From positions 124,001-188,000 of IMG/VR virus record IMGVR_UViG_3300029993_000005: 64,000 bases of DNA; one strand, given 5' to 3'. Both the position numbers and the translations under genes were made by a program. Numbering within the stretch: position 1 is the stretch's first letter; each line of letters starts with the position of its first letter. The notes beneath the pieces are model-generated. The model was not told the origin of the DNA, did not search any database, and worked only from the letters and a program-made list of their open reading frames with translations. This document shows, piece by piece, positions 1 to 7,575 of this stretch.

Positions 1-507
1 ATGAGTACACCAAATGTATCAACCGTTCCAATTACTCCAATCCCTCCTAAACTACCACTAACTGCGGCCGAAATAAAGGCTGTTGTTATTCAGTATTGCT
101 TAGACAAGAATATGGCGGTTAACGCAGAAGTAGGGTTGTGCAAATATGGAAAACTAAGGGCTGACATACTAGCCCTGACCTTTGCTGGTGACACTACGGT
201 AATAGAAATTAAAAGCTCAGTTTCTGATTTCAAATCAGACAAGAAATGGCATAACTACTTGCCATTCGCAAATAAATTTTATTTTGCAATGAGTCCTGAG
301 GTCTACGCCAAAGTGCAGGACTCAATACCAAAAGAAGATGGTATTGGTGTCATGTTGATTACACAAGCAACTCATACTTACGGCAAACCTAGATTGCATA
401 TAGAACGCAAATCCAAGCATAAAGAAATAGAAGCTAGCATCAATATTGAGCTGATAATTAGACTGGCGTTCCGCAATGCTATGTTCAATCGCCTACACCG
501 GAAATAG
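1..507 (+). CDS. MmcB-like PD-(D/E)XK nuclease / DNA repair protein
   Basis: Motif RADILAL...VIEIKSSVSDFKSDKKWHNYLPFANKFYF matches the MmcB (DUF1052) pattern. Confidence 0.7.
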   Translation: MSTPNVSTVPITPIPPKLPLTAAEIKAVVIQYCLDKNMAVNAEVGLCKYGKLRADILALTFAGDTTVIEIKSSVSDFKSDKKWHNYLPFANKFYFAMSPEVYAKVQDSIPKEDGIGVMLITQATHTYGKPRLHIERKSKHKEIEASINIELIIRLAFRNAMFNRLHRK

Positions 508-522
508 AGGACTCAAATATTC

Positions 523-2133
523 ATGAGTACCAAGCCAGAGGCTTATGCGCGTGATCTAACCTGTGTCTATTGTGGTGGATCCTTGCCGGAAACTCATTCA
601 GCCTATTCTAAGTTGAGCAAGTACACCAAGGTAAAGACTGGTAACAAGTTGGCATTTTGTTGTTTGAGTCATGCTACGTTGTTCAACAATGCAAAGCGAA
701 CTCCTGAACAATTAGCCGATATTGGTGCAAAGACAAGTGCTGCACGTAGCAAACCAATACCAGCACACGATCTAAAATGTAATCATTGCGGCACCCCTAT
801 ACATCTAGGTCACAAAGCCTACAAAACAATAGGTGCCTATAACAAAGCAAAGGCTGGATTAATCAACGTCTTTTGCAGTCTTAATCATGCTCAGCTTTAT
901 ATCAATGAGCATCGTACCCACCAACAGAAACTCAAACGTAGGTCCACCATTTCTACTGGCTGTGTACAAAATGATAGTTCTAGCCAACGCCATGAGACAA
1001 TGAAGAACCGGGGTTCTTATAACCAGAGCAAGCCTGAACTAAGAATTTTTCATAAGCTGCGTCGAGTATTGCCGAACTTAGAATATCAGTATAGGAAGCG
1101 TGAGGGCTATCCCTATGCCGCTGATTTTTACGACCCCGACTCAGATACTATATTTGAGTATCAGGGCTTCATGACGCACGGTGGTGCTCCCTATGACTCT
1201 CAATCGTCCGAACATGCGTTAAGGGTCAAGCAGTTAAAACTCAGGGCCAAGACCGATAAATGGCTTGCTAAATTAACCTTAAAGATATGGACTAGTAGCG
1301 ATCCGCAGAAACGAGCGGCTATTCGTAAATCCAATATCAACTTTGTTGAATGGTTTACTGAGGAACAGTTTGAGACCTGGTATTCGACATTCCTTGCTCA
1401 ACACCTTGGCTCCGATAAATCAAAAGGACTGGCCTACAAATTTGGATCTCAAGTACTGTGTGCTTACGACGAGCTATTACGTGCCCGCCTATTGAATAAG
1501 TACCCTGATCTTATAACATTCTATCCCTGGGAAGACGTCAACAAGGTGGCTAAACTTCTGCTACCAAAAGACGTAATGTACGCTCGTAAATTAGAGGTGT
1601 GCGTAATACCCAACGATATAGCTGATCAATTCTGTGCCAAATATCACGTGCAGGGTAAATGTCGGGGAACTACTCTATCTATAGCTTTGGTTCAAGGACA
1701 TAGAATAATTGGGGCCATGACCTTTGGGACCCCTCGGTATAACAAGAATTTCGACTATGAATTATTACGCTTGTGTTTCAGCTCAGCCATAGTCGGCGGG
1801 TCCTCTAGAATGTGGAAACTCGCAGTCTCCAAATTAGGCAACCCTTCAGTAATATCCTATTGTGATCTCTCCAAATTTAACGGTAACGTTTATAGACAAT
1901 TAGGTTTCAAGCTCAAGAGAACCCCAATCCCAGGTCTTCATTGGTATAACCCGCTAAATGGACGCCATGTAACTGATAACCTATTACGTCAACGAGGATT
2001 TGATCAACTCGTGGGTTCTAAAATAAATACTGTCTATGGAAAAGGCACTAATAACGCTGAGCTCATGACCAGTCACGGATTTATACCTGTATATGATGAG
2101 GGGCAGGCTACCTTTATCTATAACCCAATTTAG
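523..2133 (+). CDS. Free-standing homing-type endonuclease: 2x Zn-binding repeat + Vsr-like nuclease + Mom-like GNAT domain
   Basis: Two CxxC...FC(C/S)xxH repeats; ADFYDPDSDTIFEYQGFMTHG nuclease motif; C-terminal YH.QG...GAMTFG.PRYNK.FDYELLRLCF...VISYCDLSKF.G.VY..LGF; paralogous to 3603..5564. Confidence 0.7.
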   Translation: MSTKPEAYARDLTCVYCGGSLPETHSAYSKLSKYTKVKTGNKLAFCCLSHATLFNNAKRTPEQLADIGAKTSAARSKPIPAHDLKCNHCGTPIHLGHKAYKTIGAYNKAKAGLINVFCSLNHAQLYINEHRTHQQKLKRRSTISTGCVQNDSSSQRHETMKNRGSYNQSKPELRIFHKLRRVLPNLEYQYRKREGYPYAADFYDPDSDTIFEYQGFMTHGGAPYDSQSSEHALRVKQLKLRAKTDKWLAKLTLKIWTSSDPQKRAAIRKSNINFVEWFTEEQFETWYSTFLAQHLGSDKSKGLAYKFGSQVLCAYDELLRARLLNKYPDLITFYPWEDVNKVAKLLLPKDVMYARKLEVCVIPNDIADQFCAKYHVQGKCRGTTLSIALVQGHRIIGAMTFGTPRYNKNFDYELLRLCFSSAIVGGSSRMWKLAVSKLGNPSVISYCDLSKFNGNVYRQLGFKLKRTPIPGLHWYNPLNGRHVTDNLLRQRGFDQLVGSKINTVYGKGTNNAELMTSHGFIPVYDEGQATFIYNPI

Positions 2134-2143
2134 TAGGACTACT

Positions 2144-3628
2144 ATGTTCACAAATAATAGATTGTTGGGGGTCAATGGAAAGACCATCAACATGAGTCAT
2201 CAGGTGTTTGGTAATAACGGAGCCTCTGTAGCCATGCGTAGTTATAAAGGCCGTGATGATGGCTCAAAAGTAAAGTTGAGTGCCAATGTAGTGGGGAGTA
2301 GTGGCGGTGGTGGAGCCTCTATGTCTGTTAATGGTTTCTGGCAATCTAATTACCAGTACTACATGACAGGGATTATCCCGGCAGACCCCCATCTTATTGA
2401 TACCTCAACGTTAGCTCTGTTCTACAGAGATATTTATATGTTCGATAGTGTCGGCGGGTCAGTAGTTGACATATTGTCGCATTTCCCATTCTCCAGTTGG
2501 GAACTCAGAGGCCTGGATGCTCAAGATTTAAAACCTTTCAATGACGCATTAGAAAGGTTGAATATTCAGACGATGCTACCCTTAATCAGCACCGCCCATT
2601 TAACTGATGGTTTCTTTTGTGGCTCCTTAGTATTCGATCCTAAGTCCAAACAGTTTATAGACACGATGTTGCACGATGCCTTGTCCTGTGCAGTTATTCC
2701 CTCACCGTTCTTTGGAATTGACCCTACGATTAATGTGCGGGTTGGCCAAGCAACACAGCAGTTCATGCACGATACATCAGAATACGCACGTCGATATCTG
2801 CAGCAAATGCCTCATCAGTTTGTCGACATGTTGAAAAGCGGTGCATTTACATTAGATCCAGTGACCACGATGTTTATTCCACGTCGATCCACAACGGATA
2901 GAGCTTATACATCGTTTCTACACCGTATTCTTCCGATGTATTTGATTGAGAAGACTCTGTTTCGTGGAACCTTAGTTGAGACTCAAAGACGTCAACGGGC
3001 AATGACACATTTGACGGCCGGTGACGATACATGGACTCCTACATCAGAAGAATTGAATCAATTGGTACAGTCTTTTCAACAGGCTGAATATGATCCTTTA
3101 GGTGGTTGGATATCTACACGTAACGCAGTGCAAGCAGTTGATCTCAGGCCTGGCGGAGATTTTTTTAAGTTTTCTGATATGGCTGATATATTTGTTCCCT
3201 ATAAGTTAAGGGCTTTAGGTGCCAGTGAATCATTCATGAGTCAGGAAGCCTGTTTGATAGGCTCTACCCAAATTAAACTTCAGAATGGTACGACCACGAG
3301 TATAGAGAGCCTAAGTCCTATCCATGGTCTAGCACCTCATGAACTAAAGAAAGGTCAGTGGTTTCCTCTAAATTTAGAACTACCCAATCGAATTTCGAAT
3401 TCTGCTAAAACTGAAGCTTGGTCATATCAAGGTTATAGGGAAACTTTTACGGTAACCACGGAAGATGGTAAACAAGTCACAGGGACTGAAAATCATCCAT
3501 TTTTTGTTTTATGTGAAGACGGAACTACTAAATGGAAACGTCTAGACGAGCTAAAAGAAGGTGATTTAATTGCGGTAGACGAAGAAGAACAGGAAGTTAA
3601 TAATGCCCAGACCACCGTCAGCAGCTAG
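2144..3628 (+). CDS. Portal protein N-terminal part (N-extein, 369 aa) fused to split intein N-half
   Basis: RBS AGGAC before ATG 2144; portal-like segment ...YKLRALGASESFMSQEA joins TYASQEAGYSLFLE... of ORF 5564; then intein block A CLIGSTQI. Confidence 0.8.
   Translation: MFTNNRLLGVNGKTINMSHQVFGNNGASVAMRSYKGRDDGSKVKLSANVVGSSGGGGASMSVNGFWQSNYQYYMTGIIPADPHLIDTSTLALFYRDIYMFDSVGGSVVDILSHFPFSSWELRGLDAQDLKPFNDALERLNIQTMLPLISTAHLTDGFFCGSLVFDPKSKQFIDTMLHDALSCAVIPSPFFGIDPTINVRVGQATQQFMHDTSEYARRYLQQMPHQFVDMLKSGAFTLDPVTTMFIPRRSTTDRAYTSFLHRILPMYLIEKTLFRGTLVETQRRQRAMTHLTAGDDTWTPTSEELNQLVQSFQQAEYDPLGGWISTRNAVQAVDLRPGGDFFKFSDMADIFVPYKLRALGASESFMSQEACLIGSTQIKLQNGTTTSIESLSPIHGLAPHELKKGQWFPLNLELPNRISNSAKTEAWSYQGYRETFTVTTEDGKQVTGTENHPFFVLCEDGTTKWKRLDELKEGDLIAVDEEEQEVNNAQTTVSS
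3251..3625 (+). mobile_element. Split intein N-half (IntN, 125 aa)
   Basis: Cys1 block A CLIGSTQIKLQNG; block B GKQVTGTENHPFF (TxxH) followed by WKRLDELKEGDLIAV; acidic tail DEEEQE then stop with no blocks F/G. Confidence 0.93.
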
Positions 3629-5564
3629 AATAAAAACTTTAAAATGTTCTTACTGCAATGAAATCATTTCAGAGACTCACGAAATATATAAGACTAGACG
3701 GGACTACGATGAAGCTACAGCTGGACTACGCACTGTGTTTTGCTGTAAAGGGCATAGTGTGTCTTATCGCCATGATAATTTAAGCCCGGAAGATAAATTT
3801 GCATATCATGAAAAGATAGCGACGTCCCGTAAAAATCGTAGTCCTGAAGAGAAACATTTGTCAGGGACTAAACTTAGAGACACCAAAGCTAATTTCTCGG
3901 AGGAGAAAAAAGCAGATATTCGAAGTAGAATCCAGGCAACGGCTAAAGCTAATGATTCCTATGCAAAGGCTGCATTGAAACGTGAGATCACCCTAATTGA
4001 GACTCATGGTCTGGACTACGGCAAGAAACGTCAGGTCAAAGCCCGAGAGACTATGCTGAGGGAGCATGGAATTCCATGCTCCCTAGTTAGCGGTAGTGTT
4101 TTTAGGGCCAAAGCTGAGGCTACAAATGTGGAACTTTATGGTTTTCATAACGCTACAATGAACCCACAAATTGCAGCGAAAACCGTAGCTACTTATACTG
4201 AACGTCATGGCGGTATGGGAAGAGCAAGTCCTAGCGCTAATGCTGAGTATAAGAAAACCATGATAAAAGAATATGGTACTGATCAACCAATGCAAGTTAA
4301 AGAGTTTGTAGACAAGGCTAGGGAAAAGTTTAGGCAAATAGGGCGTCTAAAGTCCAACGCTACTAAAATAAAAAATAATACGACGCCTAAAGAGGTTGCT
4401 TGGAAAGGCCATGCAACTAAAAAACTTAATGGCACGTACACAACTAATAAACAAGAGCAATACATCCTCCACTGTCTTAGATCTTTACTGGGGTGTCAGG
4501 TAGAATACTTGTATAGAGACCACCCGGATTACCCATGGGAAGCTGATTTCTATGATCCCGACTCAGATACTATATTTGAATACCAGGGTTACTTTACACA
4601 TGGTGACGAAGCTTATGACAAAAACAATAAACAGCATAAGCTAAAAGTTGCTGACTTAAGTACAAAAGAAGGCTGGGCTCCAGCTCTGACATTGAAAATA
4701 TGGACTAAACTAGATCCGTTAAAAAGAAAAACTGCTAAAAACAAAAACCTATCTTTTGTAGAGTGGTTTAATATCGAGCAATTTCATGTTTGGTTCTATA
4801 CTCAAATAGCCAAACTGTTTAACGCTAAACATAGCAGGGTCAAGAGTGGATGGTTTAAATTAGCTCCTGACTATTATTTAGCATCCCACTGTGCATTAGC
4901 TAACGTTAGACTTCCGAAAGGTAGAATTATTGTATTTTACCCATGGGACGATTTGAAAAAGCTTTCTCTTATAATTTCGAAAGAAAAAGAAATAATTTAT
5001 GCTAGAAAAACTAAAATATCAATCATAACCAAAGAAACAGCGGATAAATTCTGTGAGAAATATCATATGCAGGGATCCTGCCGAGGAACCGATTTAGCTT
5101 TAGGACTTTATGTTACAACAGCAGAAAATAATAATCGACTAGTTGGAGTCATGACATTTGGGAATCCTCGTTATAACAAGAAATTTGATTATGAACTATT
5201 ACGTTTATGTTTTTCTTCTTTAGTTGTTGGTGGCTCTCAAAAATTGTGGTCCGCAGCTAATAAGTATTTAACAGGTTCAGTAATAAGCTATTGTGATTTA
5301 TCCAAATTTTCTGGGGCTATCTACACTAAATTAGGATTTATCCAGAAAAATAAACCCAAATCTTCAATTGTTTGGTACAACCCGGAATCAGGAATTCGCA
5401 TCACGGATAACCTATTGCGCCAACGAGGATTCGATCAATTAATTGGTAAAAAATTGGGAATCATATATGGCAAGGGTGAATCTAATAATGCACTTATGAA
5501 AAAATATGGTTTTATTCCTGTTCAAGACCAAGGGCAGTCCGTGTACATTACGGAGTTAAAATAA
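3603..5564 (+). CDS. Free-standing endonuclease between the intein halves (Zn repeat, T..E.YG repeats, Vsr-like nuclease, Mom-like GNAT)
   Basis: ADFYDPDSDTIFEYQGYFTHG motif; GNAT-like C-terminus as in 523..2133; overlaps portal-N stop by 26 nt, and its TAA overlaps the next ATG (TAATG). Confidence 0.75.
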   Translation: MPRPPSAARIKTLKCSYCNEIISETHEIYKTRRDYDEATAGLRTVFCCKGHSVSYRHDNLSPEDKFAYHEKIATSRKNRSPEEKHLSGTKLRDTKANFSEEKKADIRSRIQATAKANDSYAKAALKREITLIETHGLDYGKKRQVKARETMLREHGIPCSLVSGSVFRAKAEATNVELYGFHNATMNPQIAAKTVATYTERHGGMGRASPSANAEYKKTMIKEYGTDQPMQVKEFVDKAREKFRQIGRLKSNATKIKNNTTPKEVAWKGHATKKLNGTYTTNKQEQYILHCLRSLLGCQVEYLYRDHPDYPWEADFYDPDSDTIFEYQGYFTHGDEAYDKNNKQHKLKVADLSTKEGWAPALTLKIWTKLDPLKRKTAKNKNLSFVEWFNIEQFHVWFYTQIAKLFNAKHSRVKSGWFKLAPDYYLASHCALANVRLPKGRIIVFYPWDDLKKLSLIISKEKEIIYARKTKISIITKETADKFCEKYHMQGSCRGTDLALGLYVTTAENNNRLVGVMTFGNPRYNKKFDYELLRLCFSSLVVGGSQKLWSAANKYLTGSVISYCDLSKFSGAIYTKLGFIQKNKPKSSIVWYNPESGIRITDNLLRQRGFDQLIGKKLGIIYGKGESNNALMKKYGFIPVQDQGQSVYITELK

Positions 5565-5680
5565 TGAAGTTTGTAAAAATAGTTTCAATTGAGGCCTCTG
5601 GTAAAAACCATGTATATGATATAGCCATGGCTAAAGACGAGGATCCCTCATTTATTGCAAATGGTATTATTGTGCATAAT
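5564..5680 (+). mobile_element. Split intein C-half (IntC, 39 aa)
   Basis: MKFVKIVSIEASGKNHVYDIAMAKDEDPSFIANGIIVHN: block F VYDI, block G terminal HN, followed by +1 Thr (5681-5683). Confidence 0.95.
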
Positions 5681-6469
5681 ACCTATGCCAGCCAAGAAGC
5701 GGGGTATAGCCTATTCTTGGAAACAACTAATAGCTATCGGACAGACTTAACCGAACGTATTTTCAACTCAAAATTATTTCCGTTGATAGCCGTTGTTAAT
5801 AATCTGTATAAAGATCCTAGTAAAGGTAGAGCCAAGGGTGGTCAGCTACTTGATTTTTTGTTTAACAGAAACAATCGTAACAACTTGAAAATGCCACAAC
5901 TTCACTGGCATAAGGAGTTGGAAGCCAAGGGTGAAGACAACATGGCTGAACTCCTGGAATTAGCCTCTGACAAGGGTGTACCTATTCCATTGAAGATGTG
6001 GATGGCTGCTTCCAAAATTGATCCAGAATCATTGTTACGTGACCTATCTGAGGACCAAGCCTTACGCGATAAATTAGCTCAGTACACGGGTAAGGACACT
6101 AGCCATGAGGGTGAGGACGATCATGAGTTCTCTGATGAAGACGATAACGCGCATGATGGTCGGGGTGTAGACGTCAGAGGCTCGGTTCCAGGTGAACGTT
6201 TAACTACTCAACGCCTAAGTCAAATGATTCAAAGTCCACGTGTTCCGCTATTAGCCCGCGAGTTTGGGGACTCTGGTGACTCATGGACCTTCACAAAGAC
6301 GGGTAAGGTCAAACATGTTCCTTCAATAGCTAAGGCTGACCGTAATGCTAAGGCCAATGACACGATATTGAAAATTGCCAAACAGGCGGACAGGGATCCT
6401 CATTATCGTGAAGAATTAAAGAAAAGGAATCAGGCCAAACTCGGGCGTACAAAAGTTAAAGACATGTAA
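5564..6469 (+). CDS. IntC fused to portal protein C-terminal part (C-extein, 262 aa)
   Basis: After HN: TYASQEAGYSLFLETTNSYRTDLTERIFNSKLFPLIA, a portal stem-like helix continuing the N-extein. Confidence 0.8.
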   Translation: MKFVKIVSIEASGKNHVYDIAMAKDEDPSFIANGIIVHNTYASQEAGYSLFLETTNSYRTDLTERIFNSKLFPLIAVVNNLYKDPSKGRAKGGQLLDFLFNRNNRNNLKMPQLHWHKELEAKGEDNMAELLELASDKGVPIPLKMWMAASKIDPESLLRDLSEDQALRDKLAQYTGKDTSHEGEDDHEFSDEDDNAHDGRGVDVRGSVPGERLTTQRLSQMIQSPRVPLLAREFGDSGDSWTFTKTGKVKHVPSIAKADRNAKANDTILKIAKQADRDPHYREELKKRNQAKLGRTKVKDM

Positions 6470-6477
6470 GGACCACT

Positions 6478-6735
6478 ATGTATTCGTTCCTAGTAAAGGA
6501 AGTTCCTGTGTCAGTAAGTCTTGAACCAGAATACCAGTGGTTTACCTATCACGGACGTTCACCCGTTCTAATTAAGTTCCAAGGTAAGTCACTGGCTATT
6601 GGAAAGGGAAAACGTTTTGGTGTTCGGCCCTCGACTTCGGGCACTGAAATTCGTTTAGTTTTTCCCGAGGATAAGTCAAAGGTATTAACCATTAGCAGAG
6701 AACAGGCTGAAAGTTTAGCCAAAGGAGTGAAGTAA
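6478..6735 (+). CDS. Hypothetical phage protein
   Basis: 85-aa ORF, RBS AGGAC, in operon. Confidence 0.6.
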   Translation: MYSFLVKEVPVSVSLEPEYQWFTYHGRSPVLIKFQGKSLAIGKGKRFGVRPSTSGTEIRLVFPEDKSKVLTISREQAESLAKGVK

Positions 6736-7136
6736 TGGACACGCATTCTTCAGAAACCGGGGTCGACATAGAACCCGATAAAGAGTCCACTATTAAATAC
6801 TACGGTATTTTATTTGACGACTATACACCTCCAGTCGAGGGTCAAATTCTCAGGGACTGCTTAGCTCTGCAGAACATTGCGGGGCACTCAGTTGATGAAT
6901 TAGTTATTGTTTGTGAAAGTGAGGCCCCCGATTCTTTACTAAAAGCCTTGGGCTTACGCAGAGTAGGGGACCCATCTTTAACCGATGACTGGATTGTTTA
7001 TCGCACTCAAGAAGAGTGGCCCGAACCTCCTGATAATGCCACAACAGTAACGCAAAGAGACTTGTGGGTACAGCTAGGAAAAGAGAATCTGACGGTCATG
7101 GACGAGCAACATACTAATGGCTACTATTTGCCGCCT
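6735..7136 (+). CDS. Exon 1 of intron-interrupted hypothetical protein (predicted spliced product 165 aa)
   Basis: ORF runs into intron P1/P2; predicted 5' splice site after ...CCG CCT (7136), a codon boundary. Confidence 0.65.
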
Positions 7137-7479
7137 TTTTACCTGGGGCCGCTTAGCAGTAATGTTAAGTGATAAGGTTTTGAATTGCTGGAAACCCCTT
7201 AGAGCTTCTTGAACCACAACGCGTAACCACCAAATGGTTAGATGGTTAGATCGTGAAGGTTTGAAAATCAAGAAGATTGGGCAATCAGCAGCGAAGCTCG
7301 AAAGAGAACGTTCAACGACTAGGCCGTAAGGCCGTACCTACCAAGTGGTGGGGAAGTGGAGCCCTCCTAGAAATTTAGGATGAAGATATAGTCTGAACAT
7401 CTGGTGAAAGCCAGAGCAGCTACTCGATGGTAAGACGAGCAAGCGCCTTTAGCCTAACGAGCTGAGGGGAACATAAATG
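7137..7479 (+). ncRNA. Group I self-splicing intron, subgroup IA2, no internal ORF
   Basis: P AATTGCTGGAAA 7183-7194; Q AATCAGCAG 7283-7291; R GTTCAACGACTA 7310-7321; S AAGATATAGTCT 7383-7394; P2 CTTAGCA-GTAA-TGTTAAG; P7.1 GGCC-GTAA-GGCC; P7.2; P8; P9 with GAAA loop; 3' end GAACATAAATG resembles the T4 td intron end. Confidence 0.9.
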
Positions 7480-7575
7480 CAAGGAAGACTTAGTCCAGAT
7501 ACGATTAGTTTGTTACGTCCGGCACCAAATGGCTACGTTCCAACTGACCCCTCTCTTATATTGATTTGGTCCTAA
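7480..7575 (+). CDS. Exon 2 of intron-interrupted hypothetical protein (QGRLSPDTISLLRPAPNGYVPTDPSLILIWS*)
   Basis: In frame with exon 1 if splicing occurs at 7136/7480. Confidence 0.65.
   Translation, partial: QGRLSPDTISLLRPAPNGYVPTDPSLILIWS

What the first reader, a model, noticed from the sequence alone, without database searches (positions are those of the whole stretch)
523..2133. A second, paralogous nuclease-GNAT gene directly upstream: the portal N-half is bracketed by two sister endonucleases
Seen: same architecture as 3603..5564 (two Zn repeats instead of one, no YG-repeat block). The two share a 23-nt identical stretch (1135-1157 = 4557-4579, CCCGACTCAGATACTATATTTGA) and near-identical FDYELLRLCFSS and LTDNLLRQRGFDQL motifs. 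An MmcB-like nuclease is next door, so three nucleases, a split intein and an intron fall within 7.5 kb. Inference: local duplication or repeated invasion. The different N-terminal DNA-binding modules may give different targets, for example the intron-free allele of 6735..7575 (collaborative homing).
Basis: partly seen in the sequence, partly recalled or inferred. Interest (0 to 1): 0.6.

Follow-up and report, generated by a model that had tools for sequence, protein, structure and literature searches.

The report
Mobile nuclease–Mom gene beside portal
The gene at 523..2133 is a selfish, free-standing "Hef-like" homing-endonuclease gene (zinc fingers, a Vsr-like nuclease and a Mom-like acyltransferase) inserted just upstream of a jumbo phage's portal gene; it is a new member of a known family, and its sister lineage sits inside the portal's split intein.

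Summary
ORF 523..2133 (536 aa, "A") and ORF 3603..5564 (653 aa, "B") are 46% identical over 413 aa. They share the exact 23-nt stretch and both quoted motifs.

Both proteins have N-terminal Zn modules, a ~135-aa nuclease domain and a C-terminal GNAT domain. The nuclease core aligns with the EDxHD/Vsr-like prototype I-Bth0305I. The GNAT domain's best solved match is phage Mu Mom. In cultured phages this nuclease+GNAT unit is annotated "Hef-like homing endonuclease".

Most of about 50 related portal loci have MmcB directly followed by an intact portal. A-type genes occur in three distinct phages, always between MmcB and portal. B-type genes occur in six, always between the halves of a split portal intein. 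Only this phage carries both.

A tree separates an A clade from a B group, and A and B share only 56% nucleotide identity. They are old, site-specific sister lineages, not a recent local duplication.

The group I intron is real (7128..7416), but it is absent from A-only and B-only relatives, so collaborative homing has no support.

Verdict: a new member of a known kind. The open question is what the Mom-like domain does.

The parts
523..2133 (+). Gene A: free-standing Hef-like homing-endonuclease gene (536 aa), the finding
   Evidence: ORF. Paralogue of B. Present at this site only in this phage, L005 and L058/L059.
556..684 (+). Zn module 1 (aa 12-54; C14, C17, H25, C46/C47, H50), predicted DNA-binding treble-clef-like finger
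   Evidence: Matches the single module of B. Only weak Atlas leads to zf-FCS/YacG/DUF2116 fingers of phage HNH endonucleases. Copy number is 1-3 among homologues.
772..900 (+). Zn module 2 (aa 84-126; C86, C89, H94/H97, C118, H122)
   Evidence: 35% identical to the module of B, E 4e-9.
985..1392 (+). Nuclease domain (aa 155-290), Vsr-like/EDxHD type; conserved E172, D201, E212, H219, H231, D260, R264, E276
   Evidence: Profile finds 3238 cluster representatives, mostly as a C-terminal domain behind DUF7487/NUMOD3 repeats. Conserved columns. hhalign to a Hef-like protein: probability 90%, E 1.6e-6. hhalign to I-Bth0305I: E 5.7e-4, with the catalytic residues aligned.
1135..1157 (+). 23-nt stretch identical to 4557-4579; encodes P205-E212 of the nuclease core
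1393..1557 (+). Linker between nuclease and GNAT domains (aa 291-345)
   Evidence: Confidently modelled (pLDDT above 90) in the AF2 model. Conserved only among A/B-type proteins.
1558..2130 (+). Mom-like GNAT domain (aa 346-536)
   Evidence: phrog_1384 Mom-like 1.5e-8, phrog_3339 'homing endonuclease' 1.1e-32. AF2 pLDDT 96. Best Foldseek PDB hit is Mu Mom 8bv8, E 1.1e-6. VIA-align Z 13.3.
1..507 (+). MmcB-like gene: conserved upstream neighbour that marks the insertion site of A
   Evidence: PF06319, E 1.9e-19. Syntenic in most relatives.
2144..3262 (+). Portal N-extein (likely start at 2144)
   Evidence: phrog_16240 portal, 2.5e-129. Start inferred from relatives.
3263..3628 (+). Intein N-part (about 121 aa, begins CLIGST)
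   Evidence: PF14890, 7.5e-9. Boundary set from intein-less portals.
3603..5564 (+). Gene B: sister Hef-like endonuclease gene between the split-intein halves
   Evidence: The same slot is occupied in L006/L007, L060, L061 and two further contigs.
5564..5680 (+). Intein C-part (39 aa, ends VHN)
5681..6469 (+). Portal C-extein
   Evidence: phrog_16240, 4.6e-61.
7128..7416 (+). ORF-less group I intron in the gene that starts at 6735 (context only; no link to A shown)
   Evidence: Rfam RF00028, 81.4 bits. Absent in 7 relatives.

Best explanation
Gene A (523..2133) is a free-standing, site-specific homing-endonuclease gene of the Hef-like family. It is inserted as a single ORF, with its own ribosome-binding spacer, into the short gap between the conserved MmcB-like gene and the portal gene. 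The protein is modular. Two tandem Zn fingers are predicted to read an extended DNA target. A Vsr-like (EDxHD-type) nuclease domain is predicted to cut the allele that lacks the gene during co-infection with a related phage, so that recombinational repair copies A and its flanking markers into that genome. A C-terminal Mom-like GNAT domain keeps most residues that are essential in Mom and is probably an active enzyme. Its most likely role is to modify DNA (adenine) so that the resident genome is protected from its own nuclease. Gene B is the sister lineage and uses the classical 'fractured gene' slot inside the portal's split intein. What is shown here: the paralogy, the domain folds and homologies, the fixed insertion sites and the presence/absence polymorphism. 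What is inferred: DNA cleavage, homing, the target site and the role of the Mom-like domain.
For: Sporadic, site-fixed distribution. Of about 50 related portal loci, most have MmcB directly followed by an intact portal. A-type genes occur only between MmcB and portal (this phage, L005, L058/L059). B-type genes occur only between split-intein halves (six phages).
Tree. A clade 98/97, B group 81/87, A+B 100/100.
Nuclease domain. Conserved E172, D201, E212, H219, D260. Its D-to-E (+11) and D-to-H (+18) spacings equal those from Vsr D51 to F62 and H69, the positions the Vsr-like homing endonucleases are described by (PMC2677866). hhalign to the Acinetobacter phage Meroveus 'nuclease/acetyltransferase' gives probability 90%, E 1.6e-6. 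That protein matches I-Bth0305I at 9e-6. Direct hhalign to I-Bth0305I gives E 5.7e-4 and aligns E172/D201/E212/H219 with E170/D196/E206/H213. D196 and H213 are the residues mutated in PMC3239194.
Architecture. The nuclease profile hits 3238 cluster representatives, mostly behind DUF7487/NUMOD3 DNA-binding repeats.
GNAT domain. AF2 pLDDT 96. Best PDB hit is Mom 8bv8. H375, R416, D448, Y457 and W474 align with Mom H58, R111, D149, Y159 and W181 (residue roles from PMC13219725).
Naming in cultured phages. Proteins with the same unit are called Hef, Hef-like or homing endonuclease in 298-414 phage records. Hef cleaves nrdB in phage U5 (PMC2988022) and is placed in the EDxHD family (PMC3239194).
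Both A and B keep every invariant column of the family.
Against: No cleavage, target site or homing event can be shown in silico. The link of the nuclease domain to Vsr/EDxHD is weak at the sequence level. Pfam Vsr and DUF559 find nothing in the genome. hhalign to E. coli Vsr is insignificant. The probability for I-Bth0305I is only 29%, and its D222 aligns with His231 rather than an Asp. The fold of the nuclease domain could not be searched on its own. The Mom residue S124 has no conserved equivalent, so the chemistry of the GNAT domain may differ or be lost. Only three independent A-type loci are known. Promoter and terminator scans show nothing above chance.
Confidence: 0.7

Rival explanations
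1. A and B are single-chain restriction-modification-like weapons, as proposed for REase-Mom fusions of jumbo phages. The Mom domain marks the phage's own DNA, and the nuclease attacks host or superinfecting-phage DNA. The genes are not themselves mobile.
For: Iyer et al. 2021 (PMC7824862) describe Mom domains fused to REase-fold nucleases in jumbo phages and predict this role. Most Mom-like catalytic residues are conserved. The GNAT domain is the most conserved part of the protein.
Against: B sits exactly in the homing-endonuclease slot of a split intein, and related portals carry a LAGLIDADG intein or mini-inteins at this spot. Each lineage is tied to one insertion site and is absent from most close relatives. 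The N-terminal long-target DNA-binding modules are typical of homing enzymes. The two models are not exclusive: a homing endonuclease can also exclude competitors.
Confidence: 0.15
2. A arose by a recent local duplication of B (or the reverse) within this genome, and the 23-nt identity is a remnant or a gene-conversion tract.
For: The genes are adjacent and co-oriented. The 23-nt exact match is somewhat longer than expected (1.4% of codon permutations).
Against: Nucleotide identity is only 56% over the aligned codons, and only 47% of identical residues use the same codon. A is closer to A-type genes in other phages (52-59%) than to B (46%). The tree separates the lineages. Other phages carry A without B or B without A.
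Confidence: 0.03
3. A drives 'collaborative homing' of a neighbouring ORF-less element: the group I intron at 7128..7416, or the HEG-less mini-intein form of the portal intein.
For: The intron has no ORF of its own. Trans-homing by free-standing endonucleases is documented in T4 (PMC2790892, listed). L005 combines A with a contiguous mini-intein that has no endonuclease.
Against: The intron lies 5 kb downstream of A and is absent from L005 (A only), L006 (B only) and five other relatives. L058/L059 carry A beside an intein-less, intact portal. A's presence therefore tracks neither the intron nor the intein.
Confidence: 0.07
4. A is a decaying or domesticated remnant with no nuclease activity, for example a DNA-binding regulator or a pure DNA-modifying enzyme.
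For: Homing-endonuclease genes commonly degenerate. The same genome holds a third, clearly degenerate Mom-like copy.
Against: A keeps every invariant or nearly invariant residue of both catalytic domains across 12 full-length homologues and 50 nuclease-domain homologues. The ORF is intact and tightly packed in the operon.
Confidence: 0.05

Closest known systems
Hef and Hef-like free-standing homing endonucleases (phage U5 Hef; F-LimIII/VII/VIII/X of Dickeya phage LIMEstone1; multi-copy genes of Campylobacter phages)
   Same: They share the two-domain core of a Vsr-like nuclease followed by a Mom-like GNAT. They are free-standing genes placed between conserved phage genes. Several copies per genome are possible, with 9-12 places per genome in Campylobacter phages.
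   Different: The A/B nuclease domain is a divergent subtype with a longer helical insert. By tblastn it is found only in Lak megaphages among GenBank phages. The N-terminal modules are different Zn fingers, plus DUF7487 repeats in B. The sequence of U5 Hef itself was not examined here because the paper is not held.
I-Bth0305I, the EDxHD (Vsr-like) homing endonuclease family (PDB 3R3P)
   Same: The catalytic core aligns: E172/D201/E212/H219 with E170/D196/E206/H213. Both have a bipartite layout with N-terminal DNA-binding modules and a C-terminal-side nuclease.
   Different: I-Bth0305I is intron-encoded, has NUMOD/HTH modules and has no GNAT domain. Its D222 aligns with a His here. The statistical support is modest (E 5.7e-4, probability 29%).
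'Fractured genes': split inteins with a free-standing endonuclease gene between the halves (Dassa et al. 2009, PMC2677866)
   Same: Gene B reproduces this arrangement exactly: N-extein plus intein-N, the endonuclease gene, then intein-C plus C-extein, all on one strand, with a Vsr-like endonuclease.
   Different: The host gene is a portal, which is not among the eight enzyme types listed there. The endonuclease carries an extra Mom-like domain. Gene A lies outside the intein.
Phage Mu Mom (tRNA-dependent adenine carbamoylmethylation; PDB 8BV8; PMC13219725)
   Same: It has the GNAT fold with the Mom-type C-terminal insertion and is the best structural match. Equivalents of H58, R111, D149, Y159 and W181 are conserved.
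   Different: There is no conserved equivalent of the essential S124. Two invariant Cys residues (C418, C447) are specific to this family. The domain is fused to a nuclease and to DNA-binding modules. Pfam Mom does not reach threshold on A itself.
REase-Mom fusions of jumbo phages (Iyer et al. 2021, PMC7824862)
   Same: The domain fusion is the same, and it occurs in jumbo phages. PA5oct proteins appear among the structural matches.
   Different: That paper reads the fusions as restriction-modification-like defence. Here the genomic behaviour (intein slot, fixed sites, presence/absence) is that of a homing element.
T4 seg/mob free-standing homing endonucleases (intronless homing)
   Same: They are intergenic, co-oriented single-ORF insertions next to essential genes and are sporadic among relatives.
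   Different: They have different catalytic families (GIY-YIG, HNH) and no modification domain.

Membership tests
Hef-like homing endonucleases | Two-domain core: Vsr-like nuclease directly followed by a Mom-like GNAT domain | tested here: met
   hhalign of the nuclease profile to the Meroveus 'nuclease/acetyltransferase' (475 aa): probability 90%, E 1.6e-6. The GNAT domain matches 298 phage records named Hef-like or homing endonuclease. BFVD two-domain matches include CP21 and PA5oct.
Hef-like homing endonucleases | Site-specific DNA cleavage near its own locus and preferential inheritance | not testable with these tools
   Needs enzyme assays and phage crosses. Only the genomic signature is available.
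EDxHD / Vsr-like homing endonucleases | Conserved composite catalytic motif (E, D, H, D) in register with I-Bth0305I/Vsr | tested here: inconclusive
   E172/D201/E212/H219 align with E170/D196/E206/H213, but D222 aligns with His231. hhalign E 5.7e-4, probability 29%. The bridge through the Meroveus protein gives 9e-6. E. coli Vsr: E 0.24. Pfam Vsr and DUF559 give no hit. Only 1 of 50 family members touches Pfam Vsr, at 0.0077.
EDxHD / Vsr-like homing endonucleases | Restriction-endonuclease-like fold of the catalytic domain | not tested
Indirect support only: BFVD names such as 'Restriction_endonuclease_like', Atlas leads to DUF559 and a weak hit to PD-(D/E)xK exonuclease 3k93, E 0.046.
Mom family (PF25680) | GNAT fold with a Mom-type insertion, closest to Mom | tested here: met
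   Foldseek best hit 8bv8, E 1.1e-6. VIA-align Z 13.3, rmsd 2.5, 129 aligned residues, 18% identity. phrog_1384 at 1.5e-8.
Mom family (PF25680) | Pfam gathering score reached | tested here: not met
   No PF25680 hit on A or B at E up to 0.1. Homologues of the C-terminal domain do pass: P0019 32.3 bits and P0043 30.7 bits against a cut-off of 27.1.
Mom family (PF25680) | Residues essential in Mom (H58, R111, S124, D149, R151, Y159, W181) | tested here: inconclusive
   H375, R416, D448, Y457 and W474 are conserved, and K451 lies near R151. The S124 position is variable (S/T/A or other).
Homing endonuclease gene (mobile element class) | Presence/absence polymorphism at a fixed site among close relatives | tested here: met
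Fractured gene with split intein (applies to gene B, the comparator) | N-extein plus intein-N, free-standing endonuclease ORF, then intein-C plus C-extein on one strand | tested here: met
   The same layout is found in five other phages.
Recent tandem duplicate | The paralogues are each other's closest relatives | tested here: not met

The most novel reading that the evidence does not exclude
The Mom-like domain of Hef-like endonucleases is an active, targeted DNA-modifying enzyme, possibly dependent on aminoacyl-tRNA like Mom. It would mark the endonuclease's own recognition site in the resident genome. These genes would then be mobile single-chain 'homing restriction-modification' elements whose immunity does not depend on disrupting the target site. 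That would explain how a free-standing copy such as A can sit beside, rather than inside, its target.
Probability: 0.25. Interest if true: 0.75.

Novelty: new member of a known kind. Interest (0 to 1): 0.4.

Why it matters
The locus is a compact natural experiment on the life cycle of inteins and homing endonucleases. At one portal codon position, related phages show five states: no intein, a mini-intein, an intein with a nested LAGLIDADG domain, a split intein with a free-standing Hef-like gene, and, in this phage only, a second sister gene just upstream. It also places a widespread but biochemically unexplained fusion (Vsr-like nuclease plus Mom-like GNAT) in an unambiguous homing context. 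That argues against a purely defensive reading. It also makes the role of the Mom-like domain testable, now that Mom's own tRNA-dependent chemistry is known.

Tried and rejected
- Single-sequence AF2 of the whole protein failed (pLDDT 34). An alignment-based model was used instead.
- phmmer and profile searches of PDB sequences found nothing useful for A, B or the nuclease domain. The only hit was a weak one to 3k93.
- Pfam and NCBIfam give no family for the nuclease domain.
- Pfam DUF559 and Vsr models on the whole phage genome gave no match even at E 10.
- hhalign to E. coli Vsr was insignificant.
- Foldseek and VIA-align PDB searches were saturated by GNAT hits, so the nuclease fold stays untested.
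- Megablast of the first 9 kb against GenBank phages gave only a 49-bp match inside the intron.
- Co-occurrence of the intron with A or B: none.
- A stand-alone GNAT found between MmcB and portal in distant relatives was considered as a possible ancestor of the Mom-like domain and rejected (hhalign E 0.29).
- The promoter and terminator scan showed nothing above shuffled expectation.
- The original Hef paper (PMC1275590) is not held, so the architecture of U5 Hef rests on annotated 'Hef/Hef-like' homologues.
Full report
**1. What is at 523..2133**

The window is bases 124001-188000 of a 230,110-bp IMG/VR virus record, a jumbo phage that CheckV estimates at 97% complete. The first 9 kb hold co-oriented genes in this order:
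- an MmcB-like gene at 1..507 (PF06319, E 1.9e-19);
- ORF A at 523..2133 (536 aa);
- the portal N-half fused to an intein N-part at 2093..3628;
- ORF B at 3603..5564 (653 aa);
- the intein C-part fused to the portal C-half at 5564..6469;
- a KMPT-N gene, then a gene starting at 6735 and a tail-tube gene.

By comparison with relatives the portal most likely starts at ATG 2144. That is 10 nt after A's stop codon, which is followed directly by an AGGA ribosome-binding motif. A is packed just as tightly behind MmcB.

**2.

- A and B are 46% identical over 413 aa (E 7e-125).
- Each of A's two N-terminal Zn modules matches B's single module.
- The 23-nt string occurs exactly at 1135-1157 and 4557-4579.
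- That string encodes residues 205-212, the most conserved block of the nuclease core.
- Over the aligned codons the genes are only 56% identical in nucleotides. A run of 23 nt or more appears in 1.4% of codon-usage-preserving permutations. The stretch is real, but it says little beyond strong protein conservation.
- B has a DUF7487 repeat block (E 4e-12) that A lacks.

**3. Domain anatomy**

*N-terminal Zn modules.* These CxxC...H...(C)CxxH modules occur in 1-3 copies among homologues. There are only weak leads to zf-FCS/YacG/DUF2116 treble-clef fingers of phage HNH endonucleases.

*Nuclease domain (aa 155-290).*
- No Pfam, PHROG or NCBIfam model covers it.
- A profile of it finds 3238 cluster representatives (2511 at E below 1e-10). 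Most are 250-450-aa proteins carrying it at the C-terminus behind DUF7487 or NUMOD3 repeats.
- Fifty members share invariant or nearly invariant E172, D201, E212, H219, D260, R264 and E276.
- The D-to-E (+11) and D-to-H (+18) spacings equal those from Vsr D51 to F62 and H69. These are the positions by which Dassa et al. defined the Vsr-like homing endonucleases (PMC2677866).
- The link was tested directly in several ways:
  - The profile aligns to the 'nuclease/acetyltransferase' protein of Acinetobacter phage Meroveus with 90% probability, E 1.6e-6.
  - That protein weakly hits Pfam Vsr and matches I-Bth0305I at 9e-6.
  - The profile aligns to I-Bth0305I itself at E 5.7e-4, placing E172/D201/E212/H219 on E170/D196/E206/H213. 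D196 and H213 are the residues mutated in the published structure (PMC3239194).
  - Against this, the probability is only 29%, D222 falls on a His, E. coli Vsr is not matched, and the Pfam Vsr and DUF559 models find nothing in the genome.
- I therefore call it Vsr-like/EDxHD-type with moderate confidence. Its fold was not searched separately.

*C-terminal domain (aa 346-536).*
- An AF2 model built on a 76-row alignment has pLDDT 96.
- Its C-terminal domain is a GNAT fold. The best Foldseek match is phage Mu Mom (8bv8, E 1.1e-6). VIA-align gives Z 13.3.
- PHROG 'Mom-like DNA modification protein' matches at 1.5e-8, and homologues of this domain pass Pfam Mom.
- In the alignment to Mom, H375, R416, D448, Y457 and W474 match H58, R111, D149, Y159 and W181. 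These residues are important or essential for tRNA-dependent momylation (PMC13219725).
- The essential S124 has no conserved counterpart, and two invariant cysteines are specific to this family.

**4. It is a Hef-like homing endonuclease**

The nuclease+GNAT unit occurs in 298-414 GenBank phage records. It is annotated 'Hef', 'Hef-like homing endonuclease', 'homing endonuclease' or 'nuclease/acetyltransferase'. Campylobacter phages have up to 9-12 places per genome. In T4-like Acinetobacter phages it sits on the opposite strand between the major capsid and vertex genes.

Hef is an experimentally active homing endonuclease that cuts nrdB in phage U5 (PMC2988022). Taylor et al. placed Hef-type proteins in the EDxHD family. 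Iyer et al. noted the REase-Mom fusion in jumbo phages and read it as restriction-modification-like (PMC7824862).

**5. Distribution in relatives: the decisive evidence**

Forty-seven IMG/VR loci with related portals (54-100% identity) were mapped by tblastn, together with loci recovered through the homologues. They show the following:
- Three loci are the same phage from other samples.
- Most of the remaining loci have MmcB followed by a short gap, an intact portal and KMPT-N. In close relatives the gap is under 100 bp.
- A-type genes occur in L005 and L058/L059, always between MmcB and portal. They sit beside a portal with a contiguous mini-intein (L005) or with no intein at all (L058).
- B-type genes occur in L006/L007, L060, L061 and two further contigs. 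They always lie between a 459-474-aa portal-N/intein-N ORF and a 278-295-aa intein-C/portal-C ORF, and never together with an A gene.
- At the same region of the portal, L048 has a mini-intein and L042 has a full intein with a nested LAGLIDADG domain.
- A maximum-likelihood tree gives an A clade (98/97), a B group (81/87) and A+B together (100/100).
- The genome holds only these two copies of the nuclease domain.

Both genes are therefore sporadic and site-bound, which is the signature of homing elements. They are old sister lineages with different insertion sites, not a recent local duplication. This phage is the only one seen with both.

**6. The intron and 'collaborative homing'**

A 289-nt, ORF-less group I intron is present at 7128..7416 (Rfam, 81.4 bits). 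None is found in L005, L006 or five other relatives. A also occurs beside an intein-less portal (L058). Its presence therefore tracks neither the intron nor the intein. The idea is not excluded, but it has no support.

**7. Mechanism and rivals**

The most likely mechanism is as follows. A binds a long target through its Zn modules and cuts the A-less allele near the MmcB-portal junction during co-infection. It is then copied in by recombinational repair.

The Mom-like domain is probably catalytic, and I favour a self-protective DNA modification. This step is inference.

The main rival is a non-mobile restriction-modification-like weapon. It does not explain the intein slot and the fixed sites, although it could coexist with homing. 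Recent duplication, collaborative homing and decay are each contradicted or unsupported (section 5).

**8. Verdict**

The gene is a new member of a known kind: a Hef-like/EDxHD free-standing homing endonuclease, next to a known 'fractured gene' arrangement. The points of interest are the portal gene as host, the full series of intein states at one site, and the unexplained Mom-like domain.

Noticed in passing
L005:11023-11460 versus window 3263-3628 and 5564-5680: The contiguous mini-intein of L005 sits 6 codons downstream (after ...SYAAAE) of the insertion point used in the window, L006 and L048 (after ...GDA). The extein is quasi-repeated here (A|SYASAE|SAYS), so one intein family seems to use two sites 18 bp apart.
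   Followed up: partly
L042:11060-12570: A related portal (a 1113-aa ORF) carries a full-length intein with a nested LAGLIDADG domain in the same region. Together with the intein-less, mini-intein and split-intein relatives, this shows every stage of the intein/endonuclease cycle in one gene.
   Followed up: partly
window 7128-7416: An ORF-less group I intron (RF00028, 81.4 bits) interrupts the gene that starts at 6735. Bases 7273-7321 are 92% identical to an unannotated stretch of Vibrio phage 11895-B1, the only megablast hit of the first 9 kb.
   Followed up: partly
G000:C1:196056-196838 (L004:1126-1908), outside the window: A 261-aa ORF holds a third, degenerate Mom-like domain (hhalign probability 96%). 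The equivalents of H375, R416 and D448 are lost, and it has no nuclease domain. It is probably a decayed remnant of another Hef-like gene.
   Followed up: partly
L037:9350-9886, L045:9296-9886, L053:8976-9569: In more distant relatives, a stand-alone ordinary GNAT acetyltransferase (Acetyltransf_1) occupies the MmcB-portal gap, the same spot where A is inserted here. It is not detectably related to A's Mom-like domain.
   Followed up: yes
L006:5880-6527: Immediately upstream of the split portal of L006 lies a 215-aa ORF that matches only the C-terminal part of Pfam DUF7487 (positions 133-220). It has a D...E-x-K-like motif and may be another short endonuclease gene at the upstream site. Similarity to the A/B nuclease profile is not significant.
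   Followed up: partly
window 2093-2143: The longest portal ORF starts at 2093 and overlaps A. Relatives begin at the residues encoded from 2144, so the overlap is probably an ORF-calling artefact.
   Followed up: yes
L057:1598-3025 (Acinetobacter phage Meroveus) and Campylobacter phage records: In T4-like Acinetobacter phages, the Hef-like nuclease/acetyltransferase gene lies on the opposite strand between the major capsid and capsid vertex genes. Campylobacter phages carry 9-12 places per genome. Database names for the same protein range from 'hypothetical' to 'homing endonuclease'.
   Followed up: no
L005:1-3683 and L046:1809-3314: Other genes upstream in related phages also carry inteins: a 1234-aa ORF with Intein_splicing and LAGLIDADG hits in L005, and intein N and C matches in L046. 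This phage group is rich in inteins.
   Followed up: no
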